DNA from: Octopus bimaculoides
Lineage: Eukaryota
Reading direction: 5' to 3'
NCBI RefSeq assembly: GCF_001194135.2
Contig: NC_068996.1
Coordinates: forward strand, 50,588,821-50,652,820
DNA: 64,000 bases
Positions 1,354 through 60,178 of this stretch are shown here, one piece after another (position 1 is the stretch's first letter; every line of letters begins with the position of its first letter). A program made the translations under genes and the position numbers. The notes below the pieces were generated by a model. It made no database searches. It worked only from the letters and a program-made list of their open reading frames with translations, and was not told the DNA's origin.

Positions 1354-1356
1354 ATG
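1354..1356 (+). CDS. MDH1: MDH1 coding exon 1 (ATG only)
   Basis: AAGCAATCATG|GTAAGT is an initiator ATG directly followed by a consensus donor, as recalled for vertebrate MDH1. Exon 2 has no Met of its own and starts in phase 0. Confidence 0.8.
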
Positions 1357-16483: not shown

Positions 16484-16517
<34 letters not shown>

Positions 16518-16922: not shown

Positions 16923-16956
<34 letters not shown>

Positions 16957-19900
16957 GTGTGCTTAATTGGTAAAATATGACCATCCCCAAGTATAACAGT
17001 CTATATATCTTATCTGTTTTGGGTATATTGTAGAAAGCTACAATGTGAAAGTATTCATCTTGAGAAAGCTCCTTGTATAGACATGAAGTGCTAATCTGCA
17101 AACTGGTGTATTGGTAGCAGAAGAAAAGCATCCAGTAGCAGTGGTATAATTGCCAAATTATGATTTCTGTGTCTTTTCACATCATCAGAAGCAAATATCC
17201 TCTATCAACTTCATCATCATCATTTAACGTCGATGCTGGCATGGGTTGGACGGTTTGACTGGGATGGCATGGTGGAAGGCTGCACCAGACTCCAGTCTGA
17301 TTTGACATAGTTTTCTACAGCTGGATGCCCTTCCTAACACCAACCACTCTGAAAGTGTAATGGGTGCTTTTACATGCCACCGGCACAGGTGCCAATTTGT
17401 GTAACACTGGTATCTGCCACAACTGCGATTTTGCTTCGCTTGATGGGTCTTCTTCTCAAGCATGACATAACGCCAAAGGTCTTGGTCATTGCCTCCGTGA
17501 GGCCCAACACTCGAAAGGAATTCAGCCACTTTCTGTCCACGAGGCCCAACACTCCAAAGGAACCCAACCACTTTGCCTCCGTGCGGCTCGACACTCGAAA
17601 GGAACTTGGCCACTTTGCCTCTATGAGACGCAATGCTCAAAAGAAGCTCAGCCACCTTGGCTCCGTTAGTCCCAACCTCATGGTTAGACAAATTGACACT
17701 ACTGATATAAGCAGTAATTAACAAATCACAGTTGTCACACACACATAGCTAGCAGACTGGGTAAAAATTCTTAGCAATGGAAGTGGTAATAAGATGTATG
17801 TATGTATATTTAGTCCTTTCTTGAAAATATCTTTGTATTAAATTTTTGATATTACCTAGTGTTTTGAAATATAATTTTCTCCTGATCTGTTTATTTTTGC
17901 CCTAAAATGCTTTGGTATGGAAATTTTTGCTTTTCATTTTAAAACTGATTATATTTTGTTATGCATGTTGTTTAATATAAAATGTTTCTTAAATTTACAG
18001 AGCAATCCTATAAAAGTACTGGTTACAGGAGCAGCCGGGCAGATTGCCTATTCTCTCCTCTTCAATGTAGCAAAGGGAAACATCTTTGGTGCTGACACGG
18101 TAGGAAAATTATCATAGTTATTAATGTGTGTGTGTGTGTGTGTGTGTGTTATGATATTCTTCATCTCCACAATGTCAATGATTATATAAAATTGTTCAAT
18201 AATGTTGGTTGCAATTCTCTCCCTTGAAAATCTACAGCTAAATTACATGCTATGACACACACACACACACGTATTCTTTTATTTTTTTTTACTTGTTTCA
18301 GTCATTTGACTGTGGCCATACTGGAGCACCACCTTAAAAGGCTTTAAGTCAAACAAATCAACTCGAGGTCTTATATCTTAAGCCTAGTATTTATTTTATC
18401 AGTCTCTTTTGCTGAACTGCTAAGTTATGGGGACATAAACACACCAGCACTGGTTGAAAAGCGGTGATATGGGGACAAATACAGACGCACACACACACAC
18501 ATATGATAGGCTTCTTTCACTTTCCATCTGTCGTATCCACACACAAGTCTTTTGCTGGACCAAGACTATAGTAAAGTACACTTACCCAAGGTCCCATGCA
18601 GTGGGACTGAACCCAGAACCATGTGATTGGGATGCAAGCCTCTTGCCACACAATTACACTTGTACCTATGTATATCTTTTATATTTTACTTGTTTCAGTC
18701 ATTGGACTGTTGCCATGTTGGGTACCATCTTGAAGGGCTTTAGTCAAACAACTCAACCCCAATACTGGTTTTTTTTTTTAAGCCTTCTACTTATTGTAAT
18801 GGTCTGTTTTGATGTAAACAAACCAACACCGGTTGTCAAGCAGAAGTTGGGGACGAACACAAAGACACACATTAATATGTTTCAGTTTCTGTTTATCAAA
18901 TCCACTCTCAAGGCTTTTTTCAGCCCAAGGCTTTGTTCACTCCAAGAGGATAGTGAGTGCTTTTTACGTGCCACCGGTACTGGAGCCTGTCAGGGGGCAC
19001 TGGCATTGACCATGCTTGAATGGTGCTTTTTACATGCCACCAGCATGGGAGCCAGTCAGGGGGCACTGGTATAATCACATCATAATCTCAAAGCTTTGAG
19101 ATAATGCAGGATTAATTGAAAACAATGACTAAATTAAGCAGTTCAATTGACAGAGTAAGCTGAATGTTAAAAGGGTAAAATGGATAATGTAAAAATCAAT
19201 ATGATGTTGCAAAATTCACACACTATTTCAATAAGGATAGTCTTGTTCTTTCAGCCTAAATACTTTGAATATCCAGATAAGGTTTGGCCTCATGCACCTG
19301 TATGCCTGAAACACAGTTAAAATTGGCTGCTTTTCAATTACTTTTTGTTAAAAGGTTTTTGTTAAATGTCATATGAATGTAGAATTTTTGCAATCTATAA
19401 ATTGTTTATCATGCAGTTACTTTACTAAGACATTTAACATTTATTGCTGTAGAAGGACCGAGAAATCTCTATTATTGTCCAAGTCCATGTCAGTATAGAA
19501 GGCTGACATAAAATGGTGATGAGGATGCAGATGTCCCTTAAACAGTTTGTTCCTGACACTAAATATCCTTATCTCTAAAATCTACATTCAGCTCATACAA
19601 GTATACTCCCAAGCAATAATCCTCCAGCTTGCAGTTCTTTTGACTATGTTTTTATAGAGGCCTTACATTTAGAAGACATCTTGAATTTGTCTCATCTGAC
19701 AAGGCAGGGTTGTTTTACAAACCTATGAAATGTTAAGTTGCATGGAGTTGAATCAAATTGTTATTACATTATATATGTAACTCATACCTGTTATGGTGAG
19801 TGCTACTTTCATTTGTCCATTCGCTGTATGTGTGAGCCAATAAGAAGACTTCTATATGCTAGGAGTGGCAGAAATAGCCCAAAACCAGGACTGGTCTACT

Positions 19901-22900
19901 GGTCCCGCTGCTAGGAGATGGTAGGGGTTCGCTTCCCTGCTTACAATTTTATTGGATGCAGGTGTGCATTGTTAACCAGCTAGAGATGTCCTCTTGGGGT
20001 TAAAAAATTGCAGTGAGTCCGCTCAAATTGACAGCCATGTTGAAGTGGCCACGAATATTACTTATTTTAAAAAAATTTTCTAATTTAAAAAAAAATTTTT
20101 ATTTAAAAAATTTTTTTTTAGCCTATATCATTGGTACTTTTGGATATTGAACCAATGATGCAAGTTCTGGATGGAGTTGTCATGGAACTAAAAGACTGTG
20201 CTCTCCCACTGCTGAAGGGTAAGTTTCTTTGATATATAATTTCATCTCATCTCTTGTAGTTTTTATAATCTGTTTTAATACTGACAAAAATGAAAACAAA
20301 AGTATCCATTTATATAGAATCTCATATAAAGCATAAGAAAACAGCATCTATTGACATTAAAGATCTGAGTTAAGACTTTGTCTGTTTTGTACCTTTAAGT
20401 TCTGTTTTGTTTAACTCTCTTGGTATTTAAACCAGCCATATCCAGCTCAAATACTCTACCTGTTTTATGTTCATACTGACCAGATCTGACATCTCACACC
20501 TACCCTACAATGTCATTCTACAATTATACAGTCACATCATTAAAATCTCAAAGCTACAAGATAATGCATGGTTCATTCAGAACAATGTGAATAATTAAAG
20601 CATTACATTTGACAAAGAAATCTGAATGCTAAAGAGTTAAAATAGATGAAAATAGATTTTGTAGTTGTTTTACCTTTAGTGATCAAGTTGGGTGGTTAGT
20701 AAAATGAAGGGCAGCCATCCAGTTAGAAATTGAACTCTTCTATTATAAGATTTTATTTTTTTACTTAACCCATTACCTCCCATAATTCTATTAACTGGAA
20801 TTTTTTAATGAAACTTTGATTTCTAGCATAAAACAGCCTTAGAAACACGCTGAAATGATCAAAATAACATTTTAAATAGAACTAAGTGAGATATTGGGTG
20901 AAAAATTAGCAAACCTCATTTGAATATCAGAGAAATATACCTAGTAGATATAGCAAAAAGGTGAGATACGTGTAAATATTGACAGATAATTACAAAATTT
21001 GTAATTTTTAAGTGATCTCATATGAGATCACTGGTAGGTAATATGTTAATATTACAATTGGTAAATAGTAGCATTGTTAGTCACATATTTCCAATGTGCC
21101 AACCACTGGTTGACCTATTTCTGATGATGAGGGTGGTAAGGGTCATGAGGGAAGGGCCTGTGATTTGGTGCTAAAGGGATTTTGTTTGAAAGCCCCCACT
21201 CCCTTTTTTTAAATCCTTGGTTTTCTTGCAATCTACATGTTGGTATATTGGTAAGCGATGAGTGTGTATGTAGGAGGGGAGGCTTTCACTCGTTTTCTGT
21301 TTGCCGAATTCTACTTACAAAGCCGTTGTCAAAATGAAGGTAGGATAGTTGCTCATGTCTTTTAACCTCAGGTTGATCTTGGAACCACATGGTCATGAAG
21401 CTGATTTTCTTAACAACACAGCCTTGGTTGCAAATATCCTGCATAATTTTAAGGGATACGAAAGAGAAAAAAATAAATAAATAAAATTTTGAAAAATAAA
21501 AGTTTTTTTTTTTTTTTGCCAGAGCACCAGCTGTCTGGCTTTCGTGCCGGTGGCACGTAAATAGCACCATTCAAGCGTGACCGTTACCTACGTCGCCTTC
21601 CTGGCACTTGTGCCAGTGGCACATGAAAAGACATTTGAGCGAGATCGTTGCCAGTGCCGCTGGACTGACTCCTGTGCAGGTGGTACGTAAAAAACACCAT
21701 TTGAGCATGGCCATTGCCAGTACCATGTGACTGGCCTTCGTGCCGGTGGCACGTAAAAGCACTCACTACACTCTCTGAGTGGTTGGCTTTAAGAAGGGCA
21801 TCCAGCTGTAGAAACTCTGCCAAATCAGATTGGAGCCTGGTGTTGCCATCCGGTTTCACCAGTCCTCAGTCAAATCGTTCAACCCATGCTAGCATGGAAA
21901 GCGGACGTTAAACGATGATGATGATGTTGATGGGAGAAAATGTCTTCAGACTGTTTTATTAAAGACAGAGTAACATTTTTTAAGTGGGAGAACTATTTTG
22001 TATTACAACCAGCTCAGTAAGGTTCTTCAACAGCAAAATTATTCGTGTTGTGCTCCTCATTTTTTGAACCTGTTGCTGTTATTGTTGTTTTTTTCTTTCT
22101 TTTTCTTCAGTTTATTAACCCTTTAGCGTTTAAACCAGCTATACCTGCCCAAATATTGTACCTGTTTTATGTTCAAACTGGCCAGATCCAGCCTCTCACA
22201 CTTACCCCACAATGACTATTCCAAAAATAGTCACATATTCAAAATCTTGAAGCTACAAGATACTCCATGATTAATTTTAAAAAATGTGAATGAATAAGCA
22301 TTAGGTTTGATGAATTAATCTGAATGCTGAAGGGTTAATGAGTTTCTCATTTGCCTTATTGTATTGCCACTTCAAGGTTGACTCAACAACAGTTCAATGA
22401 GATATATGTACATTGTGTACTAATAAGCCATACCCAGTAAGGGTATGTGTACTCTGTGAATCTGGGACATTCTGAATTGACTCTTTAACTGTTTAGCATT
22501 CAGGTCACTCTGTCAAATGTAAACCTTATTTATTGATATTGTTTTGGAATTAATCATGCATTATCTCGTAGCTTCGAGATTTCAATAATGTGATTGTATA
22601 TTTTTAGAATGACATTGTAGGGGAGGTGTGAGAGGCTGGATCTGGTCAGGTTCAACATGAAATAGGTAGAATATTTAGGCCAGATATGATTAGTTTAAAT
22701 GCTAAAGGGTTAAAATGGTAAGGAATTATTTGAAGATCTGGCTGCTATGTCTAGCAAGTTGAGCAACCACTTAGAGGTTCTGGCATTGGCTTGTAACATT
22801 AATATGTTGCTGTTGTTTAACCCCAGGTCAACCCTGTTTGAGCAGTTCTCATGATCATCCAGTCTATTAAATCTTACTCTGTCAAATGTAATTCTTCTTT

Positions 22901-25900
22901 ATTCATTGTTTTGGAATTAATCATGCCTTATCTCATAGCTTCAAGATTTCAATGATATGATTGTATATTTTTAGAATGACATTGTAAGGTAGGTGTGAGA
23001 GGCTGGATCTGGTCAGGTTCAACATAAAACATGTAGAATATTTGAGCCAGATGTGGTTGGTTTCAATGTTAATGGTTAATCCTGGTTCAGAATTTCAAAT
23101 GTTTTCATTTATTATTGAGATGGTTTGTGTTTCCATTTGTAGCATCCTTCATACCTCCAGCTGTAGCTTTTTGCATTTTTAGTTTTGTGTTAATTTTTTA
23201 TTTGTCTATTGAATTTTTTTTTGTGCAAGGTTCCTATTGGGTGTTATTAGGGGTTAATCACTGAGTTTAATGTAATTAACTAACTATTCCCATCCCCATC
23301 TGAAATTACTGGCCATGTCTCAAAAAGCCATTACTATTATGATTATGGAACATTGAATTGACTGTTTTAATGATTATAGAGTGTTGGTGCCATGTAAAAG
23401 GCATCCAGTACACTCTGTAAAGTGGTTGGCATTAGGAAGGGTGTCGAGCTGTAGAAACTGTTGTAGTGAAATGGTATACTCCTTCCCATGTGACAAAGTG
23501 GTATGAACCAACCACTATAAAGTCAGATTGCCAGTCATTGTAGGAGGTCAGTAGTAGTAGAGTCATTGCATGAGTTCTCAGTTGGAGTCAGTTACATGTT
23601 ATATACAAGTTCGAGTTACCATTAAGGTAGATGTTTCAAAGTTGTCTTGTGGAACTATCAACAATAGCACAATAGACAAATCAAAGATAAGAAGATACAG
23701 AATACTGCCACAACATAATAGAGGTGACAAGAATATTATAGTGCCAACAACATACAAGTGGATGAGAATTCACATTATAACAGAAGCCAAATCAGAACAG
23801 ACTATGGAACCTGGTACAAACCCTGGTCTTGCCAGCTCCTGTCAGACCATCCAACCCATGCCAGCATGGAAAACGGACATTAAATGACGATGATGTCTCA
23901 GTATTTGAAACTTTGTCAGTTAAGTTAGTCTTTTATTCCTTGAGGGCTGATAGAAACAAATACCAGTCAAGTGTTTTAGTCAGTTCATTTGACAATGCAT
24001 TACCCTGACAAATTTGTAGAATAATGCTCATTTTAACCATTGCTCTTTCTATTACTGTATATTATTATTATTATTATTATTGTTCAGTAGTTTTATTTTT
24101 ATAACGTGCTTTCACTTCACTACCGAGCACAGCTCTGTGTGCCTTGGGTATGTGCTGTGGTTTGCTGTGGTGCTCTTATGTTTACTGTATTGAAAGTGTT
24201 TTGCATAGGATGTGTGCAGTACCCAGTAGTGCAATTTTCTGTATGTTATATATACTTGTAAGTCCTGGTGTTTTTGTTATGTATTTGTCTGAATATTTTT
24301 TTTATCATACCTAAGGCACCTACTATGATAGGAATTGTTTCTGTTTTTAGACTCCACATTCGAGTTACCTCTTATTATTATTATTATTATTATTTGTCTT
24401 TCTCTTCTCAGAAATAACCTCAACTGCTTCTCTTGATGTTGGTTTTAAGGATATTGATGTGGCTCTTCTTGTTGGAGCCATGCCACGTAGAGAAGGAATG
24501 GAAAGGAAAGATCTTTTGGCTTCCAATGTGAAAATTTTCAAGAGTCAAGGGCAGGCTCTAGATAAATATGCCAAAAAGTCTGTCAAGGTAAGACCAGATT
24601 TTCGGTTCTATATATTTTACTCCTTTTCAAGTCTGGAATTATAATCTCTGAATTAAAATAACATACAGATTTAATTCGACATGTTGGGCATCATCATCTT
24701 GTAATGCAATCCTATTGTAATGTTCTTGTTTAACTCCATGGCAGCATATGATGAAAAATGTTCTTACCATGACCATCTCATCTATTATTCAAATGTAGTG
24801 TATCTATGACTTTAATTAACCAATTTACCTTGATAAATCCAATCTAGACAAAAAAAAAAGGTTTTGGTTGAAATATAAAATTCTCAGCAATTATTAAGAA
24901 GTTTGATTTTTTTTTTTTTCCCATTATAATCTGCAATATTTGGTCAGTTCATCATCGTTTAACGTCTGCTTTCCATGCTAGCATGGGTTGGACGATTTGA
25001 TTGAGGACTAGTGAGACCAGATGGCTACACCAGGCTCCAATCTGATTTGGCAGAGTTTCTACAGCTGGATGCCCTTCCTGACGCCAACCACTCAGAGGAG
25101 TGTAGTGGGTGCTTTTACGTGTCACCCGCACGAAGGCCAGTCAGGCGGTACTGGCAACGGCCACACTCAAAATGGTGCATTTTATGTGCCACCCGCACAA
25201 GAGCCAGTCCAGGGGCACTGGCAACGATCTCGCTCGAAAATCCCACGAAGGCCAGCCAGGCGGCACTGGCAACGGTCACGCTCAAAATGGTGCATTTCAT
25301 GTGTCACCCGCACAAGAGTCAGTCCAGGGGCACTGGCAACGATCTCGCTCGAAAAATTTCGAGTACTATTTTAAATCTAATTTTTCTTTTCCATGCTGGT
25401 AATAATTCAGTGATTTTTAGCAAATTTGGATACATTCATATTGTTTTAGTAGTTATTTTTACTATCTTTCCTTATTGCTAGCTGTAAAATAATTGAGAAA
25501 CCTGTTGCCTGACAACATAAAAGGAAATAGTTATGTGCTTTAGGCACCCTATAATGTATTTTGCACTAGTAATAAGATTGAGGTTACCTCTCATTGGTAA
25601 TTCCTAGTACACTCTTGATTTCGACTTTAATTTCACTTGCCTCAACAAGTCTTCGCAAGTAGAGTTTAGTGTCCAATGAAGGAAAGGTACGCATAAGTGG
25701 GCTGGTTAAACCACTGGCACAGGCCATCGTTATGGTCTCACTTGGCTTGTCGTGTCTTCTCTAGCACAGCATATTTCCAGAGGTTTCAGTCACTAGTCAT
25801 TGCCTCGGTGAGGCCTAATGTTCGAAGTTCATGCTTCACCACCTCATCCCAGGTCTTCCTGGGTATACCTCTTCCACAGGTTCCCTCAACCGCTAGGGTG

Positions 25901-26606: not shown

Positions 26607-28464
26607 CAAATTCCGCCGAGGTCGGCTTTACCTCTCATGCTTTAGGGGTCGATAAAATAAGTACCAGTCGAACACTTGGGTCTGTGTAATCGACTTATTC
26701 CCTTCCCCAAAATTGCTGCCCTTGTGGCAAAATATAAAATTATTATTATTAAAGTGGCAAGCTGTCAGAATCATTAGCATGCCAGACAAAATGTTTTGCA
26801 ACATTTTACTTGTCTTTACATTCATCATTATCATCATCATCCCATGTCTGTTTGCTATGCTGGCATGGATTGGATGGTTTGACCAGAACTGGCAGACTGG
26901 AGAGCTGCACCAGGAAGTAGGAGGCTAAATTAGATGCTAGAATTGTAGTTGTACAGTAAAGTGCCTTAGAAGAGGAGGAGTTGGGCTTTGTGCTTCTCCT
27001 CACCTATGGTCATGAATGTTGGGTAATGATCAAAAGAGTACAATTACAAGTACATGTGACCAAAATGGGGTTCCACCGAAGCATGTCTGAAGTGATGTTG
27101 CTGGACAGGATCAAGCTGCATTGAGAGGTCACAGCTCTGGTATTAGAGGCATGCAATCAGAACATCATAGGGAAGAATCACCAGAGGGAGTCTTCAAGCT
27201 GAGCCAACCAGCAGGAAAGCTAGTGATAGACCAAGAATGAACTGGTTGGACAATATCTATAGTCTCAGTAGGTCATGCTTGACACTTGTTTCTGATAAGA
27301 CCCTATGGAGGAGGTATCTGAGAACATAACTCCCAGGACCCTTCCAGGAATAGTGGGTGAAGAAAATGGATGAATGAAACAAAAATATCTTGTGATATTT
27401 AGTCCAAATTATGTCATTTTATACCAATGTGCCCACAGCCATTCATCTGTTAGGATTTCAATAAAATAAATACCAGACAAAAGTACTGAGTGGAGATGAG
27501 ACAATATAATAAATAATGAATCATGGCTGTGTGGTAAGAAACTTGCTTCCCAACCATATGGCTCTGGGTTCAGTTTTGAGTGAATTTGGTAGACAGAAAC
27601 TGAAAGAACCCTGTCGTGTGTGTGTGTGTGTATGTGTCTGTGCTTATCCCCACCATCACTGCTTGATAACTGGTGTTGGTATGTTTACATCCCCATAACT
27701 TAGTGGTTTGGCAAAAAAGACTAATAGAATAAATACTAGGCTTAAAAAAAATAAGTCCTGAGATTGATTTCTTCAACTAAAAAAACCCTTTAAGATGGTG
27801 TTCCAGCATGGCCACAGTCAAATGACTGAAACAAGTAAAAAAAAAATAAAAGAATAATGGCGGTACTCCAGTTTGGTCGTAGTTGGAAGATTGACAACAT
27901 TTTATGTACATGTCAGTTGATACCTTTTATAGATGTGTAATGTGTTTGTTTATATTTCAGGTGGTCGTGGTTGGGAACCCTGCCAATACAAATGCTCTCA
28001 TATGCATGAAATATGCTCCCTCTATTCCACCACAAAATTTCTCAGCATTGACTCGACTTGACCAAAATCGGGCCCAATATCAAGTATGTATTTTTTTTGT
28101 TTGTTCTTTTNNNNNNNNNNNNNNNNNNNNNNNNNNNNNNNNNNNNNNNNNNNNNNNNNNNNNNNNNNNNNNNNNNNNNNNNNNNNNNNNNNNNNNNNNN
28201 NNNNNNNNNNNNNNNNNNNNNNNNNNNNNNNNNNNNNNNNNNNNNNNNNNNNNNNNNNNNNNNNNNNNNNNNNNNNNNNNNNNNNNNNNNNNNNNNNNNN
28301 NNNNNNNNNNNNNNNNNNNNNNNNNNNNNNNNNNNNNNNNNNNNNNNNNNNNNNNNNNNNNNNNNNNNNNNNNNNNNNNNNNNNNNNNNNNNNNNNNNNN
28401 NNNNNNNNNNNNNNNNNNNNNNNNNNNNNNNNNNNNNNNNNNNNNNNNNNNNNNNNNNNNNNNN

Positions 28465-28498: not shown

Positions 28499-31400
28499 TC
28501 ATTCAATAATAGGATAAAATCTTTTATAAGAATTTATCAAGTTGCTAGTGTGAAAAAACCTCATAAGGGAAAAATCATTTATTCCCCAGAATATATTTAT
28601 TTATATAAGGGCATTACTATACATGAATGCCTCATGCTAAGAGGGACTCTAAGGTCAAACTATCATCATAAACACTTTTTTACCAAACGCGAGGAAATGT
28701 AACTCTCCAAGCTAGCCTCTTAAAAACAGACTAAACTATAGATCGACGATTTCACAGTTATTACAGCAATATGTAAGTTCTGCTCTTCAGTACAGTATGG
28801 TCAAGATACATAAAAATAAACAAAAAAATTCAACATTTTAAACGAACACCTCATGTATGAGCGAATGAAGAAAAAGAATACCAAACCCTTTCTTATTATC
28901 TGAGAGTAAAGAATTTATTCATTTCTAATTAGATTTTTAATGTTTCATAATGAACTTACTTATGAACCATTGGGTTTATTGGTTATATTTTAACCTTTTT
29001 GCATTTAGACTAGCCATATCAGGTCCAAGTATGCTACCTGTTTTATATTCAAACCAGCTAGATCCAGCTTCTCACACCTACCCTACAATGTTATTCATAA
29101 AATAAACAACCTTGTCACTGAAATCTCAAAGCTACAAGACAATGCATGAGTAATTGCAAAGCAACATGAATGAATAAGGATGACGTTGACAGAATAATCT
29201 GTGAATGCTAAAAGGTTAAACTGGCCTGGCCTAAATATTTTACTTGTTTTATGTTCAAACTTTCCAGATCCAACCTCTCATACTTACCCTACAATGTCTT
29301 TCTACAAATAAACAATGTGATTGTTGAAGGGTTCAATTTACTTTCAGAGAAACTTATGCACCATTGTATTTATTAATGTAATTTAAAGTATTAATAAAAT
29401 TCTTTTTCTTTTTTTCCTTCTGTTACCAGATTGCTACTAAGTGTGGTGTCTCTGCCCAAGATGTCCACAATGTGATTATCTGGGGGAACCATTCCTCCAC
29501 CCAATACCCAGACGTTTCCCACGCAACTGTAAAATTATCATCTGAGACGAAGTCGGTTAAAGAGGCTGTTAAGGATGATAAATATTTGAAGAATGATTTC
29601 TTAAAGGTATCAACTAATCACTTTTATTTAACGTAATGTCAGTCCTGGTCAGCTGACATACGACCAAAAGCCTTCCAGCGATGACCATTCCGGTTTTTCG
29701 TTTTGGGGGTGGGGGTGATTTTAAAAAATATATCTCAGATTACATTATTGATGCACCATTCCTTCTTTTATAAAAAAAAAACCCAGTAGGATGTGACTTA
29801 AGAAAGGTTGTTTTGCTGCTATTTCTAGCAAGTCAAAGAACCATGTAGAATGGCAGTTTGCAATGTTTCTCTGGTACCTTGTCATCCTATCTCCCTACAC
29901 CGAGGTATACAGCACCCTTGTTTAAGCTTCAAGGGATATCTTGCTATACACTCCTATAACAACTGTTTATAACAACCTAGAATGTTGTGATTTCCACTCC
30001 CATTTGGAGACCACTGATGTAACGACTCCAATAATTATTGAATTGTATTGACACAGTATATTTTTTGTATTTATTTATTCAATCTCGTCTGCAATATTTC
30101 TAACTTGTCGTAGTTTTTATTGTTGTAAGTGATGGGAGCAGGTTGTTGTTAGAAGTAATAAAATTTGAACAATTAAATGTCCATACGATACTAATCATAT
30201 GAGCTATTAACCTTTTTGTTTTCTTTTAGGATGAAAACATTTTGTTTTTGTTTTTAAGGATTCATCTCTAAAAATAACAGATGCGTCTTTGGCTGTGTGG
30301 TTAAGAAGTTTGCTTTCCAACCATGTGATTTGGGGTTCAGTTTCACTGTATGTCCCCTGGGCTGTAGTAGAAGTGCTTTCTACTATTGCCCAGGGCCAAC
30401 CAAAGCTTTGTGAATGGATTTGGCAGACAGAAACTGAAAGAAGCTTGTATGTGTGTAGTGTTGTCTAGACATCACGTGACAGTTGTAAATAAGCATCTTT
30501 GTCATACAAGCAATGTTCTTTGTCACCAATCTTCCATGAAACACATGTCTAGCCATAGGGAAATATTACCATGATTAGAAACAGGTGATAGCTGGCAATA
30601 TCCATTCATTGGAAATCTGCCACAGCAAATTCCACCCTACTCATAAAAGAAAGCAAATGTCGACATTCAAATGGTGATGATAGAGTTTGTACATTTAAAC
30701 TAGATATTTCACTGTTATTACTTAGGAATTTATCATTGCTTTCACACTTTTAAGTCACTTTGAAGAACATGCTGAAAAATGTATTATAAATTACAGTAAT
30801 CTGCAGTAACCATGCAGAGTCCTTTGCATGAACCTGTTCTGCTCCCTCTGCCATATTAATGTGTTAATATGAAGCTGATCCCCACTTCCTACCCAGGGCT
30901 CATAATCCTGCAAATTGCATGGCACCCTCTGTTGTGCAGGTGGCATGAAAAAAAAAGATACCCTATTCCTGCTGTGAATTTGTTGTTATTAGGAAGGGCA
31001 TACAACTGTAGGAACCATACCAAAACAGATATTGGAGCTCGATGCAGTCCTGGGACCCATCACATCCTGTCAAACATCCAACCCATGCTGGCATGGAACA
31101 TGGATGCTTAATGATGATGGCCATTGCCAGTACTACCTGACTGGCCTTCATGCCGGTGGCACGTAAAAGCACCCACTACACTCTCAGTGGTTGGCGTTAG
31201 GAAGGGCATCCAGCTGTAGAAACTCTGCCAAATCAGATTGGAGCCTGGTGTAGCCATCTGGTTCACCAGTCTTCAGTCAAATCGTCCAACCCATGCTAGC
31301 ATGGAAGGCGGACGTTAAACGATGATGATGATAAATCAGTGTGGCTTGTGTTTGGTTTAAACCTGTGGAGTTACTCAAAATGGTCCTTATAAAAATCAAC

Positions 31401-31979
31401 AATGACACTGGAAATGGCATGTTTTGTTAAGAAACAGGTATTTGATTGGAATGAATTGAATTATGAAAGAATATATTTGATTCTTAATTGGTATTTTCTC
31501 TCTCTTTTCAGTGTGTTCAAGAGCGTGGAGCTGCAGTTATTAAAGCCAGGAAATTGTCGAGTGCAATGTCTGCTGCTAAAGCTATTTGTGATCATGTCCA
31601 TGATTGGTGGCATGGAGTGCCAAGTGTAAGCTTTTTAAGACCAAATCTGTTTTGATAGTGACTTTGTGTTTCAATGAATTATGAAAATGATCAAGAATGG
31701 AGAGAGATTTAGTTTTAAAAAAGCCACATTAGTGGATTTGGTAGATGGAAACTGAAAAAGAGCCCATCGTGTGTGTCTTTGTGTCTGTGTTTGTCTCCTT
31801 ATCACTGCTTGACAACTTAGTTGGTGTGTTTGTGTCCCCATAACTTAGTGGTTCAGCAAAACAAACTGGTAGAATAAGTACCAGGCTTAAAAAGTAAGTA
31901 CTGGGATTGATTCATTCAATTAAAAGTTCAAAGCAGTGCCCCAGCATGGCCACAGTCTAATGACTGAAACAAATAAAAG

Positions 31980-32022: not shown

Positions 32023-33570
32023 TATCAGCCACACATACACAGTGTATGTATTTTTGCATGTTTGCTGGTTCGCTGCCGTACAGCACTCCGCAGTTGACTC
32101 CCTCATAACACTGAATGTTAAAACAACTGAAAATCACAGACAGGCAAGACAACTGTCATATCCAGGTGTGATGGATACCAATATTTCGCCATTTTTGTGG
32201 CTTATCAANNNNNNNNNNNNNNNNNNNNNNNNNNNNNNNNNNNNNNNNNNNNNNNNNNNNNNNNNNNNNNNNNNNNNNNNNNNNNNNNNNNNNNNNNNNN
32301 NNNNNNNNNNNNNNNNNNNNNNNNNNNNNNNNNNNNNNNNNNNNNNNNNNNNNNNNNNNNNNNNNNNNNNNNNNNNNNNNNNNNNNNNNNNNNNNNNNNN
32401 NNNNNNNNNNNNNNNNNNNNNNNNNNNNNNNNNNNNNNNNNNNNNNNNNNNNNNNNNNNNNNNNNNNNNNNNNNNNNNNNNNNNNNNNNNNNNNNNNNNN
32501 NNNNNNNNNNNNNNNNNNNNNNNNNNNNNNNNNNNNNNNNNNNNNNNNNNNNNNNNNNNNNNNNNNNNNNNNNNNNNNNNNNNNNNNNNNNNNNNNNNNN
32601 NNNNNNNNNNNNNNNNNNNNNNNNNNNNNNATTATAGCCCTGGGCAGACCAATGCCGTATGAATGGATTTGGTAGATGGAAACTGAAAGAGGTCCCTTTT
32701 GTATATTGTGTGTGGTGTGTGTGTGTGTGTTTGAGTATGGGATTGTCTTCAAGAATTAATGTCACACAAGTGGTATTGTTCATTTCCAAACTTACATGAA
32801 AAACATGTTTCGTTGTAAAGGAATATTTATCTTACCTGGAAACAGGTGAGGGTTGACATCTTGAAGGGCATCTGGCTATAGAAAACTGCCTCAACAAATT
32901 CTGTCTGACTCATGCAGGTATTGAAAAGTGGACATTAAACATCAACAATGAATTACAAGATTAACTTTATAATTTTCAAATTTGATATTGCTTTTGTAGG
33001 GGTTGTGAAAATGAAAAATTTTGCAGGGTCATAGGATATATGAAAGATTAGGAACCATTGATGTAGAATCTCCATTATTAACTCATGAAGTAATGTCAAA
33101 GTTGAAGCAGAGCAGCTCTTAAAAGGTGTCATTTCTTGCCTTCTTTTAGTTTTGTTTTTGTCAGCCTTATTTCTTCTAAATCATTATATTTCACAATGTT
33201 TTCTACTTCAAGGAATTTTTGACATACAATTTGTCTCTACAAGTATGTTTCATGACTAACTTTAATTAAAAATTTTTTTTTAAATGTTTCCAATGTTTTT
33301 TTGGACACACCATTAGTTTTTATATTTTAATAAAATAAAGATTTCTTTTGTTCATTTCAGGGTACTTATGTATCAATGGCTGTTTGTTCAGATGGTTCCT
33401 ATGGTATTGAAAAGGGTCTCATCTTCAGTTTTCCGGTGATTACCAAACCTGATCATAGTTATGAAATTGTCAAAGACTTGGCTATTGATGACTTTTCCAG
33501 ATCTAAACTGGATATAACTCTCAAAGAACTTCTTGATGAAAGAGATCTTGCTTTGAGTGTTTGCGAATGA
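1354..33570 (+). CDS. MDH1: Cytosolic malate dehydrogenase, spliced CDS join(1354..1356,18001..18099,20122..20218,24412..24587,27961..28083,29430..29606,31512..31625,33361..33570), 332 aa
   Basis: The eight exons (3+99+97+176+123+177+114+210 = 999 nt) splice in frame with GT-AG boundaries. The protein has the NAD-binding [41 protein letters not shown], catalytic TRLDQNRA and [12 protein letters not shown], and [24 protein letters not shown], all diagnostic of MDH1. Confidence 0.97.
4040..4124. mobile_element. 85-bp hairpin MITE, GG...CC ends, 8-bp TSD (ATCAATTT/ATCAATCT), central CCCTAA repeats
   Basis: Arms GGCGGAGGTAAAGAGTACGCACACC and GGTGTGCGTATTCTTTACCTTCGCC. A sister copy lies at 5823-5901. 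Confidence 0.75.
4195..4550 (+). mobile_element. tRNA-derived SINE, family A (diverged)
   Basis: Shares GGATTTGGTAGACGGAAACTGAAAGAA, a (GT)n core and the AAATGACTGAAACAAGTAAAAG-type tail with the copy at 37578. Confidence 0.8.
5586..5740. mobile_element. hAT (Charlie-like) MITE
   Basis: TIRs CAGTGGTTCCCAATCT and AGGTTCGGAACAACTG; 8-bp TSD GTCTAGTG/GTCTTGTG. Confidence 0.8.
5823..5901. mobile_element. 79-bp hairpin MITE, same family as 4040-4124
   Basis: Near-perfect palindrome around CCACCCGTTTTCG-C-CGAAAACGGGTGG; 8-bp TSD GATCGGAG/GGTCGGAG. Confidence 0.75.
6686..6860 (+). mobile_element. SINE family C fragment (further copies at about 11985-12185 +, 26608-26735 +, 38705-38900 -, 38925-39105 -, 40735-40935 +, 63860-64000 -)
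   Basis: Shared core TTCTGAGTTCAAATTCCGCCGAGGTCGACTTTGCCTTTCATCCTTTCGGGGTCGATAAA..AAGTACCAG. Confidence 0.75.
6866..7096. mobile_element. TTAA-flanked (piggyBac-like) MITE, family E; second, inverted copy at about 37309-37532
   Basis: TTAA-ACCATTTTGTTACC...TATCAAAAGGG-TTAA; the internal sequence matches the 37.3 kb copy in reverse. Confidence 0.55.
9370..10990 (-). mobile_element. Decayed L1/Tx1-clade LINE ORF2 (RT and C-terminal region)
   Basis: Minus-strand peptides [46 protein letters not shown] and [23 protein letters not shown], with many stops and frameshifts. Confidence 0.85.
12325..12617 (+). mobile_element. RTE-derived non-autonomous element with (GAT)n tail
   Basis: GGGCCTCACGGAGGCAAT (GLTEAM) ORF2-end remnant, then AGGAAGGGCATCCAGCTGTAGAAA...CCATGCCAGCATG...GATGATGAT. 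Confidence 0.75.
13209..13403. mobile_element. piggyBac-like MITE, family D (right end decayed)
   Basis: Starts TTAA-CCCTTTGGCATTCAG; body matches the copy at 22485-22713. Confidence 0.7.
16645..16930. repeat. Inverted repeat with about 120-bp arms in MDH1 intron 1; each arm carries a decayed hammerhead-like motif
   Basis: 16645-16762 is the imperfect reverse complement of 16806-16930 (TGGTCTTCA..TTTAGTTTCTTTGTCAAAG..CACACATCCTG versus CAGGATGTGTG..CTTTGACAAAGAAACTAAAA..TGAAGACCA). Confidence 0.85.
17211..17690 (-). mobile_element. RTE-derived non-autonomous element whose 5' part is about 4.5 tandem copies of a 42-bp unit
   Basis: (GAT)n tail at 17211-17223, RTE 3' UTR core, ORF2-end remnant ([13 protein letters not shown]), tandem GCCTCCGTGAGGCCCAACACTCGAAAGGAACTCAGCCACTTT. 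Confidence 0.75.
18001..18099 (+). CDS. MDH1: MDH1 exon 2 ([33 protein letters not shown])
   Basis: Acceptor TTTACAG, donor GTAGGA, 99 nt, Rossmann glycine-rich motif. Confidence 0.96.
18280..18650 (-). mobile_element. SINE family A (a second partial copy at about 18680-18910)
   Basis: Reverse complement of the 37578 consensus: TTACTTGTTTCAGTCATTTGACTGTGGCCATACTGGAGCACC... Confidence 0.85.
20122..20218 (+). CDS. MDH1: MDH1 exon 3 ([32 protein letters not shown])
   Basis: Acceptor TTTTTTTTTAG, donor GTAAGT, 97 nt. Translated by hand; it is absent from the ORF track. Confidence 0.96.
20411..20640. mobile_element. piggyBac-like MITE, family D
   Basis: TTAA-CTCTCTTGGTATT...AATGCTAAAGAG-TTAA. 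Confidence 0.75.
21517..21930 (+). mobile_element. Young RTE 3' UTR copy with (GAT)n tail
   Basis: CpG-retaining; ends CCATGCTAGCATGGAAAGCGGACGTTAAACGATGATGATG. Confidence 0.85.
22115..22338. mobile_element. piggyBac-like MITE, family D
   Basis: TTAA-CCCTTTAGCGTT...AATGCTGAAGGG-TTAA: CCCT/AGGG termini with TTAA on both sides. Confidence 0.85.
22485..22713. mobile_element. piggyBac-like MITE, family D, opposite orientation to 22115 (a further partial copy at about 22874-23079)
   Basis: TTAA-CTGTTTAGCATT...AATGCTAAAGGG-TTAA. Confidence 0.8.
23459..23782. mobile_element. Solo-LTR-like insertion (TGTTG...TAACA) splitting an RTE-tail copy
   Basis: TG/CA termini, imperfect 5-bp duplication GAAAC/GAAGC; the host repeat resumes on the other side. 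Confidence 0.5.
24412..24587 (+). CDS. MDH1: MDH1 exon 4 ([59 protein letters not shown])
   Basis: Acceptor TCTCTTCTCAG, donor GTAAGA, 176 nt, contains the substrate-binding Arg loop. Confidence 0.97.
24950..26530 (-). mobile_element. 5'-truncated RTE LINE (3' UTR 24950-25356; ORF2 end about 25628-26530, interrupted by about 270 bp)
   Basis: Minus-strand peptide [63 protein letters not shown]; (GAT)n tail. Confidence 0.9.
26975..27370 (+). mobile_element. Decayed Rex3/Expander-like RTE fragment
   Basis: Translates to [31 protein letters not shown], resembling the PTLTYGHELWVMTER..AAEMSFLRR motif of Expander-type RTEs. Confidence 0.6.
27515..27850 (+). mobile_element. SINE family A (further copies at about 30280-30470, 31730-31980, 32630-32730, 50200-50420, 63000-63245)
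   Basis: ATGGCTGTGTGGTAAGAA head; tail CCAGCATGGCCACAGTCAAATGACTGAAACAAGTAAAA. Confidence 0.85.
27961..28083 (+). CDS. MDH1: MDH1 exon 5 ([41 protein letters not shown])
   Basis: Acceptor ATATTTCAG, donor GTATGT, 123 nt, catalytic Asp in RLD. Confidence 0.97.
28990..29330. mobile_element. piggyBac-like MITE, family D (28990-29219), with an adjacent partial tandem copy
   Basis: TTAA-CCTTTTTGCATT...AATGCTAAAAGG-TTAA, followed by a repeat of the internal sequence. Confidence 0.75.
29430..29606 (+). CDS. MDH1: MDH1 exon 6 ([59 protein letters not shown])
   Basis: Long polypyrimidine tract plus CCAG, donor GTATCA, 177 nt, catalytic His in GNHS. Confidence 0.97.
31118..31332 (+). mobile_element. 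Young RTE 3' UTR copy with (GAT)n tail (other copies at about 34755-35030 -, 52866-53375 -, 56677-56902 +)
   Basis: GGTTGGCGTTAGGAAGGGCATCCAGCTGTAGAAACTCTGCCAAATCAGATTGGAGCC...GATGATGATG. Confidence 0.85.
31512..31625 (+). CDS. MDH1: MDH1 exon 7 ([38 protein letters not shown])
   Basis: Acceptor CTCTCTTTTCAG, donor GTAAGC, 114 nt. Confidence 0.97.
33361..33570 (+). CDS. MDH1: MDH1 terminal coding exon 8 ([26 protein letters not shown]...[14 protein letters not shown])
   Basis: Acceptor TTCATTTCAG, 210 nt to TGA at 33568-33570. Confidence 0.97.
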
Positions 33571-33591
33571 CTGTTTGATCCTAAATTGTAA
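33571..33591 (+). other. Putative stop-codon readthrough extension of MDH1 (X-LFDPKL*), PTS1-like C-terminus
   Basis: TGA CTG TTT GAT CCT AAA TTG TAA is in frame after the stop. UGA-C is a leaky context and PKL is a PTS1-type tripeptide. Confidence 0.6.
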
Positions 33592-33704
33592 CCTTGCCTT
33601 AGACAAATATCTTGTGAAAAATATGATATTTTTAGATGTCCTTAGTTTACACAGCTACATCTTTATAATTTGATTCACAAAGAAAATATTTCTCTGATAA
33701 AAAA

Positions 33705-33710
33705 AATAAA
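33705..33710 (+). promoter_or_regulatory. Candidate MDH1 polyadenylation signal AATAAA (a second one at 33918-33923)
   Basis: First AATAAA hexamers downstream of the stop, followed by T-rich sequence. Confidence 0.45.
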
Positions 33711-35689
33711 TTTTTTAAAGATTTCCCCTGAAACTCAAGTTCTTAGGTTAAATTTTCTGTATCTAATTCAATAGATTAAGTGATTGTGCTAATTGTTTTG
33801 GCAAAATGATGTCCCCCTATCAAGAAGTAGATATTTTTAAAATGAAGAATAAGGTATATATTATGGTAAAACTGTTTCAGAACAAGAATCGATCAAAAAG
33901 TAAAATTAAAAATTAAGAATAAAACATTAAAAAAAAAAATTAAAAAAATGAAAACGGTTTATTGATCTGAAGAATAACATATTGAAATTTTGCTTGTAAT
34001 TCATGTCTTCAGAATAAATATTTGTAACAGGATTCTATACTGTATTCTTGTTTTATACATCACACTTGCACATACATACATAAGCAAATAAATAAACCGT
34101 TTTTCCATGCTTGGTTGGGCGTGAGTCTCACAGAGACTCTGAGATCCTTTGTCATTTGGGATATGGTAGCAGAGGAAACCAATCTTAGTTGTGTATATAA
34201 TTTTATGATTGGCTTCCTTTATTTTCAGCAACCATTTTGCAGCATAGACTCTACGCATTTTATCACACCACTGGCACTAAAAAGATTGTCTGTGACATGA
34301 TTAGATAGCCCCTTCTTAATAACTTTGAATAAAAGGGAAAAAAAAAAACTGAAACCCAAATTTTATTCAGTTATTTGCTCCTAGGTGGTTTGTCTGCTCT
34401 GTGGCTTGTGCAGTCCATGTCTCTTCCATTCATTCCTTTCATATTGCCAACCCAACTCACTGGTCATTGTTCTAAAATTAGACAAAAAGTCTCTGCAAGA
34501 AAGAAGCATTAACAAACTTGCATCAGAACGTCAGTGTATCGCTACTGGGTGACTTCAACCTGCCATAGCCTCAAATGGCCAAAAAGACTAACTTCTCTCT
34601 GGAATTCACAGTATGATGACAAATGAATAATCTTCACTTGACCTCATTGTTATGCAAGTCATTGGAATAAATGGTCCACTGCAGATGCAGAGGCAACAAA
34701 AGTAATTTGAAAATTACGATATGAAGGTGACTCTTAGGTTTTATTTCTCCAACCACATCATCATCATCATCATCGTTTAACGTCTGCTTTCCATGCTGGC
34801 ATGGGTTGGATGGTTTGACTGAGGACTGGCAAGCCAGGTAACTGCACCAGGCTCCAATCTGATCTGGCAATGTTTCTACATCTGGATGCCTTTCCTAACA
34901 CCAACCACTCTGAGAGTGTAGTGGCTGCTTTTTAAATGCCACTGGCACAGGTGCCATTCAGACGGTACTGGCATCGACCACGCTTGAATGGTGCTTTTTA
35001 CATGCCACCGATACGGGAGCCAGTGATGTGCAGGCCAAAAGAAAATGTTGCTCAGAACTTTACCAAATACATACAGAACTGCCAAAAAATGTATACACAC
35101 TTCAGGAAAGGAAAAATTTTTATTAACGTTTTTTATTTAGTGTTATCGCAGTTTGACAAATCATGGAAAGAGGCATCTATATTTATTGAGGTACTTATAC
35201 AAGTTAGATATTTATACAGATTTTTCCTTTCTTGAAGTGTGCATACATTTTTTTGGTGAACTCTATATTAGCATGTTTAGTGTGAATTCTAATGGGAAGA
35301 AATTTTAGTTGAGGGTACAAGGGCTGTAATCTAAGGGCTAAAACCAAAGTCCTAGCAAATAGGAAAATGGACAAATCTAAAATCCCTCTAGAGAGATGGC
35401 CTTATTCAAGATGTGGGAAAGGTACTGGTAGAAACTCCATACAGTGTACCCACTATGGTTGAATGGCTTGGCCAGCTGGGGAGCTGTCCAGGTTCCATTC
35501 GTCTATTTTGGAATGGATGCATAAGAGATGTGGTGTATCATGGGAAGGTTAACAAAAAGGAGCCTTTGTGTGTGACAGATGTGCAGGTATAATAAATACT
35601 AAGAATGTACAGAGAATAGACTTCCTGAAATGTTTGGGGGTCCTTAGCAGACAGCTTCCATTACCTAGGTAACTGAGTAGTGGAGGAGG

Positions 35690-44560: not shown

Positions 44561-44679
44561 TCTTGATGCGGGTTCTTTAGCTTCCAAATCCTTCTCCTCT
44601 GGATCAGTCTGCTTCTAGGCATCCTCTTGGTCTCGAGTCAAAAGTCACTAATGACTAGTCTATGCTAGGAGTGGAGGGT

Positions 44680-60126: not shown

Positions 60127-60178
<52 letters not shown>

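What the first reader, a model, noticed from the sequence alone, without database searches (positions are those of the whole stretch)
33568..33591. Hidden peroxisomal targeting signal behind the MDH1 stop codon (UGA-CUG ... PKL*)
Seen: the MDH1 ORF ends GAA TGA CTG TTT GAT CCT AAA TTG TAA, so readthrough would add X-L-F-D-P-K-L and stop immediately after a PTS1-type tripeptide. Established: UGA followed by C is the leakiest stop context. Vertebrate MDH1 and LDHB use UGA-CUA readthrough to make peroxisomal isoforms (MDH1x, LDHBx) carrying a hidden PTS1. PKL is a recognised non-canonical PTS1 variant. Inference: this mollusc gene may make a peroxisomal MDH1 isoform through a much shorter 7-residue extension unrelated in sequence to the vertebrate one, meaning a deeply conserved or convergent peroxisomal NAD+ shuttle. 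In a coleoid, A-to-I editing of UGA to UGI (read as Trp) is a second possible route, although the 5' G neighbour disfavours ADAR.
Basis: partly seen in the sequence, partly recalled or inferred. Interest (0 to 1): 0.9.

Follow-up and report, generated by a model that had tools for sequence, protein, structure and literature searches.

The report
Octopus MDH1 hidden peroxisome signal
The octopus gene for cytosolic malate dehydrogenase has a leaky-type stop codon followed by six codons that spell a peroxisome address tag. The same arrangement is kept in squid-like cephalopods, argonaut, oyster, mussel, abalone, chiton and a brachiopod, so it is very probably real, but it is the invertebrate counterpart of the already described vertebrate MDH1x isoform.

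Summary
The window is Octopus bimaculoides. Its cytosolic MDH1 gene (8 coding exons, 1354-33570, + strand) ends GAA TGA CTG TTT GAT CCT AAA TTG TAA at 33565-33591.

Nine of ten lophotrochozoan lineages I could fetch keep three features, while the linker sequence and its length (5-8 codons) turn over freely:
- a TGA stop followed by C (CU in eight of the nine);
- a short in-frame extension;
- an end in [S/A/P/H][K/N]L directly before a second stop.

Argonauta and three decapodiform sequences end in SKL, and another decapodiform in AKL. Haliotis and Ostrea independently end in PKL, like Octopus. The leech has TAA and no signal. Leu and Lys codons in the tripeptide differ synonymously, and the second stop varies while the first is always TGA. 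Chance is excluded (P about 1e-10 even with a permissive motif).

Translational readthrough producing a minor peroxisomal MDH1 isoform is therefore the best explanation. Readthrough and import were not measured, and PKL with Asp at -4 is probably a weak signal. A-to-I editing and selenocysteine find no support.

Stiebler et al. 2014 already reported that the cryptic MDH1 PTS1 is conserved across animals down to Hydra. This is a new member of a known kind.

The parts
1354..1356 (+). MDH1 coding exon 1: the ATG only, followed by a GTAAGT donor. Intron 1 is about 16.6 kb.
   Evidence: Located by blastn of the O. sinensis exon-1 region against the window and by reading the sequence. P0001 begins MSNPIK.
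18001..18099 (+). MDH1 coding exon 2
   Evidence: tblastn and AG/GT boundaries
20122..20218 (+). MDH1 coding exon 3
24412..24587 (+). MDH1 coding exon 4
27961..28083 (+). MDH1 coding exon 5
29430..29606 (+). MDH1 coding exon 6
31512..31625 (+). MDH1 coding exon 7
   Evidence: A donor after AGT restores the frame.
33361..33567 (+). MDH1 last coding exon up to the final sense codon GAA (protein ends ...LALSVCE)
   Evidence: The assembled protein is 100% identical to P0001.
33568..33570 (+). Annotated stop codon UGA, proposed to be leaky. It is TGA in all 9 lineages that carry the extension.
33571..33573 (+). CUG directly after the stop. C at +4 and U at +5 form the 'UGA CU' readthrough core. The third base is G here, against A in vertebrates, Haliotis and the chiton, and U in decapodiforms.
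   Evidence: The motif is as described.
33571..33588 (+). Readthrough extension L-F-D-P-K-L (6 codons, 7 added residues counting the recoded stop)
33580..33588 (+). CCT AAA TTG = P-K-L, a PTS1-type C-terminal tripeptide. Orthologues have SKL, AKL, PKL, HKL, ANL or SNL.
33589..33591 (+). Second in-frame stop, TAA, placed directly after the tripeptide. Orthologues have TAA, TAG or TGA.

Best explanation
The sequence is the octopus version of the MDH1x module.

Proposed mechanism:
- Most ribosomes terminate at UGA 33568-33570 and make ordinary cytosolic MDH1.
- A small fraction decode the UGA with a near-cognate tRNA, helped by the C and U that follow.
- In human MDH1x the inserted residue is Arg or Trp. 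That this also holds in octopus is inferred.
- Those ribosomes add L-F-D-P-K-L and stop at TAA.
- The new C-terminus, PKL, acts as a probably weak type-1 peroxisomal targeting signal read by PEX5. A minor share of MDH1 would then enter peroxisomes and re-oxidise NADH there, as one half of a malate/oxaloacetate shuttle.
- Because MDH1 is a dimer, extended subunits could also carry normal ones in. This too is inferred.

Shown here: the sequence, the orthology, and selection-type conservation of stop identity, the +4/+5 bases, the terminal tripeptide and the position of the second stop across Lophotrochozoa.

Inferred: that readthrough happens in octopus, at what rate, which residue is inserted, and that PKL after Asp is imported.
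For: 1. The gene is cytosolic MDH1 of O. bimaculoides.

2. Orthologue 3' ends (table), with x marking the recoded stop:
- O. sinensis: TGA CTG ... xLFDPKL*
- Argonauta: TGA CTG TCT GAC TCC AAA TTA TAA, xLSDSKL*
- four decapodiform transcripts: TGA CTT ... xLLALESKL*, xLLTLESKL*, xLFSLKSKL*, xLPTSPAKL*
- Ostrea: TGA CCT ... xPSPKL*
- Dreissena: xLGSHKL*
- Haliotis: TGA CTA ... xLLGPKL*
- chiton: TGA CTA ... xLTPPANL*
- Lingula: TGA CTT ... xLVNKMSNL*

3. Only the leech Helobdella differs (TAA GTT, xVIVGGAVS*).

4. Binomial P for 9 or more of 10 lineages is 6.6e-11 with a permissive PTS1 pattern and 4.3e-10 for TGA-C.

5. The conservation is protein-like, not nucleotide-like:
- the final Leu is TTG, TTA, CTC or CTT;
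- Lys is AAA or AAG;
- the octopod Asp at -4 is GAT or GAC;
- the first stop is always TGA while the second is TAA, TAG or TGA;
- the extension is no better conserved in nucleotides than the flanking UTR (72% against 72% for Octopus/Argonauta; 54% against 85% between decapodiforms).

6. The codon after the stop is CTN, never TTR, in 8 of the 9 lineages. This fits a nucleotide motif UGA CU rather than a need for leucine.

7. Unidentified eukaryotic MDH1 transcripts from metatranscriptomes show the same design: TGA CTA ...SHL*, TGA CTT xLSNL*, TGA CTA G xLEESKL*.

8. The mechanism is proven for human MDH1 and LDHB.

9. PKL is accepted as a PTS1 elsewhere and occurs here in three separate mollusc lineages.
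Against: - There is no direct evidence from octopus: no Ribo-seq, peptide, reporter or localisation data.
- The context is UGA CUG U, not the optimal UGA CUA G. In human cells, TGA CTT and TGA CTC contexts gave 0.13-0.66%, close to a background of 0.1-0.2%.
- PKL is not in the canonical [SAC][KRH][LM] set, and Asp at -4 is an unfavourable neighbour. In plants, acidic residues at -6 to -4 inhibit weak tripeptides.
- The identity between O. bimaculoides and O. sinensis is uninformative, because their whole 3'UTR is 97% identical.
- Sampling is 10 lineages. The four decapodiform sequences come from unnamed sequencing runs, and only one can be tied to a named species, through a cluster that contains Sepia pharaonis.
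Confidence: 0.75

Rival explanations
1. Decaying relic in Octopus. The readthrough-PTS1 module is ancestral and functional in other cephalopods (SKL, AKL). In the genus Octopus the Ser-to-Pro change, the Asp at -4 and the CUG context have weakened it so far that little or no MDH1 reaches peroxisomes.
For: Argonauta and three decapodiform sequences have canonical SKL and one has AKL, while only Octopus has PKL among the cephalopods sampled. PKL is classed as weak, and acidic upstream residues inhibit weak signals in plants. Non-CUA contexts read through poorly in human cells. The two Octopus species are too close to show selection.
Against: TGA, the CU, the reading frame and the stop directly after the tripeptide are all intact. 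PKL is also the end of the extension in Haliotis and Ostrea, which means three independent occurrences in nine lineages. PKL serves as the PTS1 of zebrafish Idh1. Argonauta keeps the same Asp at -4 with a synonymous codon, and decapodiforms tolerate Glu there.
Confidence: 0.15
2. A-to-I editing of the UGA to UGI (read as Trp), rather than ribosomal readthrough, is the main route to the extended protein in coleoids.
For: Coleoids recode transcripts extensively (general knowledge). The edited codon would give the same extended protein.
Against:
- The 221 nt around the stop fold no better than shuffles (z = -0.69).
- No full-length protein with W at the stop and the extension exists among about 15 billion predicted proteins for seven cephalopod sequences, although the TGA form of one is on 99 contigs. 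This is a weak negative, because assemblies drop minor variants.
- The same architecture is kept in oyster, abalone, chiton and brachiopod, which are not known for massive recoding.
Confidence: 0.03
3. Coincidence, or a conserved non-coding 3'UTR element (for example a regulatory site) that merely happens to translate into a PTS1-like peptide.
For: For a single gene the joint chance is not negligible genome-wide: 7.1% for TGA-C times 0.2-5.8% for the tripeptide. Decapodiform 3'UTRs are well conserved in general.
Against: Nine of ten lineages share the features, with P about 1e-10 or lower. Nucleotides in the extension diverge as fast as or faster than the flanking UTR, while the amino-acid end, the frame and the stop placement are kept. 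Changes in the tripeptide codons are synonymous or stay within PTS1-compatible residues.
Confidence: 0.02
4. The UGA encodes selenocysteine.
For: An in-frame UGA is followed by an open frame.
Against: No SECIS or any other Rfam family at E <= 1 beyond two weak chance-level hits in the 3.4 kb after the stop. The extension is only 6 codons. No MDH1 selenoprotein is known (general knowledge).
Confidence: 0.01

Closest known systems
Vertebrate MDH1x (readthrough-extended cytosolic malate dehydrogenase; Hofhuis et al. 2016, PMC5133446; Stiebler et al. 2014, PMC4207609)
   Same: It is the orthologous gene. It has a UGA stop, C and U at +4 and +5, and a hidden PTS1 as the last three codons before the next in-frame stop. 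Its proposed role is a peroxisomal NAD+/NADH malate shuttle. Stiebler et al. state that the cryptic MDH1 PTS1 is conserved in animals down to Hydra.
   Different: - The extension is 6 codons here, against about 18 after the stop in human (7-nt context plus 50 nt).
- The context is CUG U, against CUA G.
- The tripeptide is PKL, against CRL in mammals and SRL in other vertebrates.
- There is no recognisable sequence similarity between the extensions.
- Readthrough (about 3-4%), Arg/Trp insertion and import are measured in human cells and unmeasured here.
Mammalian LDHBx (Schueren et al. 2014, PMC4359377)
   Same: It adds a seven-residue extension, the same length as in octopus. Readthrough is driven by the stop context without RNA structure. 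It carries a hidden PTS1, and unextended subunits are imported by piggyback.
   Different: It is a different, though related, dehydrogenase. The context is UGA CUA G. It is restricted to mammals, whereas the MDH1 module is far older.
Readthrough PTS1 isoforms at UGA CU in fungi and in invertebrate NADP-isocitrate dehydrogenase (Stiebler et al. 2014; Freitag et al. 2012)
   Same: The short core motif UGA CU is sufficient, and the extension ends in a PTS1. The supplement lists a mollusc example: Aplysia IDH, TGACTA, N16-SKL.
   Different: These are other enzymes. The octopus and decapodiform MDH1 contexts lack the A at +6 that further stimulates readthrough.
Dedicated peroxisomal malate dehydrogenases (yeast Mdh3 with C-terminal SKL; plant peroxisomal MDH)
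   Same: The same enzyme activity is delivered to peroxisomes for NAD+ regeneration.
   Different: These are separate genes with a constitutive targeting signal. Here, one gene would yield both cytosolic and peroxisomal forms through recoding.

Membership tests
MDH1x-type readthrough peroxisomal isoform | The host gene is the cytosolic NAD-malate dehydrogenase MDH1. | tested here: met
   tblastn exon map. The assembled protein is 100% identical to NCBI 'malate dehydrogenase, cytoplasmic [Octopus bimaculoides]', with Pfam Ldh_1_N and Ldh_1_C.
MDH1x-type readthrough peroxisomal isoform | UGA stop followed by CU (core motif of Stiebler 2014) | tested here: met
   TGA CTG at 33568-33573. TGA-C is present in 9 of 10 lineages and TGA-CT in 8.
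MDH1x-type readthrough peroxisomal isoform | Full high-readthrough consensus UGA CUA G (Schueren 2014; Loughran 2014) | tested here: not met
   Octopus has G at +6 and U at +7. Only Haliotis, the chiton and two metatranscriptome sequences have CUA. Human reporters with CUU or CUC gave 0.13-0.66%.
MDH1x-type readthrough peroxisomal isoform | The in-frame extension ends with a PTS1 tripeptide directly followed by a stop. | tested here: met
   CCT AAA TTG TAA = PKL*. The same placement occurs in 9 of 10 lineages.
MDH1x-type readthrough peroxisomal isoform | These features are conserved among orthologues under protein-level constraint. | tested here: met
   synonymous Leu, Lys and Asp codon changes, a variable second stop against an invariant first stop, a variable linker, and P about 1e-10.
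MDH1x-type readthrough peroxisomal isoform | Measured stop-codon readthrough above background | not testable with these tools
   Needs a reporter assay, Ribo-seq or mass spectrometry.
MDH1x-type readthrough peroxisomal isoform | PEX5-dependent import of the extended protein into peroxisomes | not testable with these tools
   Needs localisation or binding experiments.
PTS1 (type-1 peroxisomal targeting signal) | C-terminal tripeptide within canonical [S/A/C][K/R/H][L/M] | tested here: not met
   Octopus has P at -3. Argonauta and three decapodiform sequences (SKL) and one decapodiform (AKL) meet it.
PTS1 (type-1 peroxisomal targeting signal) | The tripeptide is among documented non-canonical PTS1 variants. 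| tested here: met
   PKL is the PTS1 of zebrafish Idh1, scores +1.3 for chicken IDH in the PTS1 predictor, and is a verified weak plant PTS1.
PTS1 (type-1 peroxisomal targeting signal) | Favourable upstream residues (basic or non-polar, not acidic, at -4 to -6) | tested here: inconclusive
   L and F at -6 and -5 are favourable and D at -4 is unfavourable (plant data only). No PTS1 predictor was available here.
Selenoprotein (UGA = Sec) | SECIS element in the 3'UTR | tested here: not met
   Rfam scan of 33300-37000 at E <= 1 found no SECIS.
A-to-I recoding site | Target A lies in a stable duplex with a favourable 5' neighbour, and G appears in transcripts. | tested here: not met
   The 5' neighbour is G. 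Fold z = -0.69. No W-variant protein was found in the collection (a weak test). RNA-seq reads were not available.

The most novel reading that the evidence does not exclude
In coleoid cephalopods the share of MDH1 sent to peroxisomes may be set by two layers acting on the same UGA. The first is basal ribosomal readthrough at a deliberately sub-optimal context (CUG or CUU with a weak PKL signal in Octopus). The second is tissue-specific A-to-I editing of UGA to UGG. This would make the site the first example of RNA editing controlling organelle targeting of a metabolic enzyme.
Probability: 0.04. Interest if true: 0.75.

Novelty: new member of a known kind. Interest (0 to 1): 0.4.

Why it matters
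Peroxisomal beta-oxidation needs NAD+ regenerated inside an organelle whose membrane does not pass NAD(H). Animals have no dedicated peroxisomal MDH gene. Vertebrates solve this by programmed readthrough of MDH1.

The same module appears across cephalopods, bivalves, a gastropod, a chiton and a brachiopod, with the stop identity, the +4/+5 bases and the terminal tripeptide kept while everything between them turns over. This supports the view that it is one of the oldest programmed readthrough events in animals.

It also provides a natural series of short extensions (5-8 codons) and contexts (CUA, CUG, CUU, CCU) for dissecting what is minimally needed.

It flags an annotation gap: the extended isoform is not annotated in mollusc genomes.

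It does not open a new question, since the principle and its wide conservation are already published.

Tried and rejected
- **Metagenome scan for more MDH1 loci.** Seventy-odd of the 80 loci were bacterial MDH at 52-55% identity. Only seven were examined as candidate eukaryotic transcripts, and they have no taxonomic label. They are supporting evidence only.
- **Naming the Logan cephalopod transcripts.** Only the cluster of P0007 contains a named protein (Sepia/Acanthosepion pharaonis). The others are called 'decapodiform' from their 90%+ similarity to it and 77-78% identity to octopus. Their exact species are unknown.
- **Exact look-up of seven cephalopod proteins with Trp at the stop plus the extension.** None was found. 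This is only a weak test of editing.
- **Rfam scan for SECIS or other elements, and folding for a readthrough-stimulating or ADAR-substrate structure.** Nothing was found.
- **Literature search for measured readthrough at 'UGA CUG'.** No paper was found. Search for readthrough, MDH and molluscs: nothing specific.
- **Species list of Stiebler et al. Figure 4C.** The figure is not held as text. The supplement shows that Aplysia was their mollusc for IDH, so a mollusc may already appear in their MDH1 panel.
- **Structure prediction of the tail.** I considered this and dropped it as not decisive.


Full report
**What is in the sequence**

The window reads ...GTT TGC GAA TGA CTG TTT GAT CCT AAA TTG TAA.

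A probe with a vertebrate MDH1 sequence maps seven homologous exons on the + strand between 18001 and 33570. With AG/GT boundaries they join into an open frame of 331 codons. A first coding exon holding only the ATG lies at 1354-1356, followed by GTAAGT. I found it by comparison with O. sinensis.

The product is 100% identical to the NCBI protein 'malate dehydrogenase, cytoplasmic [Octopus bimaculoides]'. The gene and organism are therefore settled, and the TGA is the annotated stop.

**Is it more than chance?**

Taken alone, not convincingly. In all six frames of this window:
- 0.19% of stop triplets are preceded by [SAPH][KN]L;
- 0.30% are preceded by the strict PTS1 pattern;
- 5.8% are preceded by a permissive pattern;
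- 7.1% of stop triplets are TGA followed by C.

A genome would hold several to a hundred such coincidences. The case rests on the identity of the gene and on orthologues.

**Orthologues**

I fetched DNA around twelve relatives (table). In the list, x marks the recoded stop.

| Lineage | Sequence after the last sense codon | Extension |
|---|---|---|
| O. sinensis | identical to O. bimaculoides | xLFDPKL* |
| Argonauta hians | TGA CTG TCT GAC TCC AAA TTA TAA | xLSDSKL* |
| Decapodiform transcripts (four) | TGA CTT CTC GCC CTA GAA TCC AAA CTC TAG | xLLALESKL* |
| | (near-identical sequence) | xLLTLESKL* |
| | TGA CTT TTC TCC CTC AAA TCC AAG CTC TAA | xLFSLKSKL* |
| | TGA CTT CCT ACT TCT CCA GCC AAA CTT TGA | xLPTSPAKL* |
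| Ostrea edulis | TGA CCT TCA CCC AAA CTC TAA | xPSPKL* |
| Dreissena polymorpha | TGA CTT GGA AGC CAC AAG TTG TGA | xLGSHKL* |
| Haliotis asinina | TGA CTA TTA GGA CCT AAA CTT TAA | xLLGPKL* |
| Liolophura sinensis (chiton) | TGA CTA ACT CCT CCT GCA AAT CTT TGA | xLTPPANL* |
| Lingula anatina (brachiopod) | TGA CTT GTG AAC AAA ATG TCG AAT CTC TGA | xLVNKMSNL* |
| Helobdella robusta (leech) | TAA GTT ... | xVIVGGAVS* |

- The O. sinensis identity is uninformative, because the whole 3'UTR of the two Octopus species is 97% identical.
- One of the four decapodiform sequences belongs to a cluster that contains Sepia pharaonis.
- The leech is the only lineage without the module.

I count Octopus as one lineage and the three similar decapodiform sequences as one. 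On that count, 9 of 10 lineages have TGA-C plus a short extension ending in a PTS1-type tripeptide directly before the next stop. The binomial P for 9 or more of 10 is 6.6e-11 with the permissive tripeptide pattern and 4.3e-10 for TGA-C.

**The kind of conservation**

The conservation is that of a coding C-terminal signal, not of a nucleotide element:
- The final Leu is written TTG, TTA, CTC or CTT.
- Lys is written AAA or AAG.
- The octopod Asp at -4 is GAT in Octopus and GAC in Argonauta.
- The linker differs in sequence and in length (5 to 8 codons).
- The second stop is TAA, TAG or TGA, while the first stop is always TGA.
- The codon after the stop is CTN in eight of the nine lineages and never TTR. 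This points to the bases C and U rather than to leucine.
- In nucleotide identity the extension is no better conserved than the UTR after it: 72% against 72% for Octopus versus Argonauta, and 54% against 85% between the two decapodiform groups.

Three unidentified eukaryotic MDH1 transcripts from metatranscriptomes show the same design: TGA CTA ...SHL*, TGA CTT xLSNL*, TGA CTA G xLEESKL*. A fourth has a TAA stop but a native C-terminus CKL.

**Mechanism**

The best explanation is programmed low-level translational readthrough of the UGA, which adds (Trp/Arg)-LFDPKL. The new C-terminus would act as a PTS1, so that a minor share of MDH1 is imported into peroxisomes.

The mechanism is experimentally established for human MDH1 and LDHB:
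- about 3-4% readthrough;
- Arg and Trp inserted at the stop;
- dependence on the stop context and not on downstream structure;
- PTS1-dependent import;
- piggyback import of unextended LDH subunits.

The core motif was defined as UGA CU, with an A at the next position stimulating further.

For octopus the steps after the sequence are inferred. Two points suggest a weak version:
- The context is CUG U. Human reporters with TGA CTT or TGA CTC gave 0.13-0.66%, against 1.5-2.9% for CTA G. I found no measurement for CUG.
- PKL lies outside the canonical set and is preceded by Asp. In plants, acidic residues at -6 to -4 inhibit weak tripeptides.

Other observations speak for function:
- PKL is taken as the PTS1 of zebrafish Idh1 and scores positive for chicken IDH.
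- PKL is the end of the extension in Haliotis and Ostrea as well as Octopus, which means three separate origins in nine lineages.
- Argonauta has SKL, so the Octopus Pro most likely arose from Ser (TCC to CCT).

**Rivals**

- **Relic weakened beyond use in Octopus.** This cannot be excluded without experiments. I give it 0.15.
- **A-to-I editing of the UGA.** It finds no support. The target A follows a G. The surrounding 221 nt fold no better than shuffles (z = -0.69). No protein with Trp at the stop plus the extension is present among about 15 billion predicted proteins for seven cephalopod sequences (a weak test). Non-coleoid molluscs and a brachiopod keep the same module.
- **Selenocysteine.** It is excluded as far as Rfam can see (no SECIS).
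- **Chance, or a non-coding conserved element.** The pattern excludes both.

**Comparison with what is known, and novelty**

This is the orthologue of vertebrate MDH1x. The differences are:
- a much shorter extension (6 codons, against about 18 after the stop);
- an extension sequence with no recognisable similarity to the vertebrate one;
- CUG U in place of CUA G;
- PKL in place of CRL or SRL.

The length equals that of mammalian LDHBx (seven residues).

The idea of deep conservation is not new. Stiebler et al. [quoted passage not shown] Their IDH table includes the mollusc Aplysia with TGACTA N16-SKL. I could not read their Figure 4C to see which invertebrates it lists for MDH1. No paper in the library deals with cephalopod or mollusc MDH1 readthrough specifically.

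I therefore file this as a new member of a known kind. What is added here is the lophotrochozoan series, the recurrent PKL in molluscs, the non-CUA contexts in cephalopods and the loss in a leech.

**Verdict**

- Function in octopus is probable (0.75) but unmeasured.
- Interest is moderate (0.4).

Noticed in passing
window 1354-18000: The first coding exon of MDH1 holds only the ATG (1354-1356, then GTAAGT). Intron 1 is about 16.6 kb, so the gene spans about 32 kb for a 332-residue protein.
   Followed up: partly
window 953-971, 3094-3103, 28111-28464, 32209-32630, 39739-40058, 48069-48127, 49258-49787, 53884-53893, 60259-60268, 62013-62178: There are runs of N (assembly gaps). Two of them lie inside MDH1 introns, just after exon 5 and before the last exon. 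None touches coding sequence or the stop region.
   Followed up: no
window 58468-59109 (-): An open frame of 214 codons matches Pfam Transposase_1 (mariner-type DDE) at E = 1.9e-30. It is a transposon fragment downstream of MDH1.
   Followed up: partly
window 44131-45147 (-): Two adjacent open frames look like a LINE. One has a weak match to the endonuclease-reverse transcriptase domain Exo_endo_phos_2 (E = 1.2e-4, below Pfam's cutoff). The other has a reverse-transcriptase-like tail with no Pfam hit.
   Followed up: partly
window 25005-25478 and 15 or more other sites (e.g. 17275-17386, 21516-21865, 31118-31271, 34834-35024, 45584-45899, 52930-53168, 56658-56838): A dispersed SINE-like repeat occurs on both strands at 72-94% identity, with an internal tandem duplication of about 112 bp. 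Several copies lie inside MDH1 introns.
   Followed up: partly
L020 (Helobdella robusta), stop at 3216-3218: The leech MDH1 ends with TAA GTT, and its extension (VIVGGAVS) has no PTS1. It is the only sampled lophotrochozoan that has lost the module.
   Followed up: no
L023 (metatranscriptome contig Ga0247647_1003336), stop at 1109-1111: A eukaryotic MDH1 transcript with a TAA stop has a regular C-terminus ...AVCKL. This is a PTS1-like end in the main frame and needs no readthrough.
   Followed up: no
L017 (Lingula anatina) 1-420 (-): A gene with the Pfam Frtz (Fritz/WDPCP) domain lies head-to-head upstream of MDH1. As far as I recall, WDPCP is also the neighbour of MDH1 in human, which would suggest old microsynteny. 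I did not check this in the octopus window.
   Followed up: no
clusters of P0005 and P0007 (P0121, P0126): Some decapodiform transcripts give MDH1 proteins of 377-381 residues, with a conserved 45-49-residue N-terminal addition (MLKFPEVLGSSLDV... / MFKFPEVLGRSLDV...) read from the 5' leader. This could be an upstream in-frame start or an artefact of ORF calling.
   Followed up: no
window 60031-60380: A long (TG/CA)n microsatellite reads as poly-(His-Thr)/(Cys-Val) open frames on both strands.
   Followed up: no
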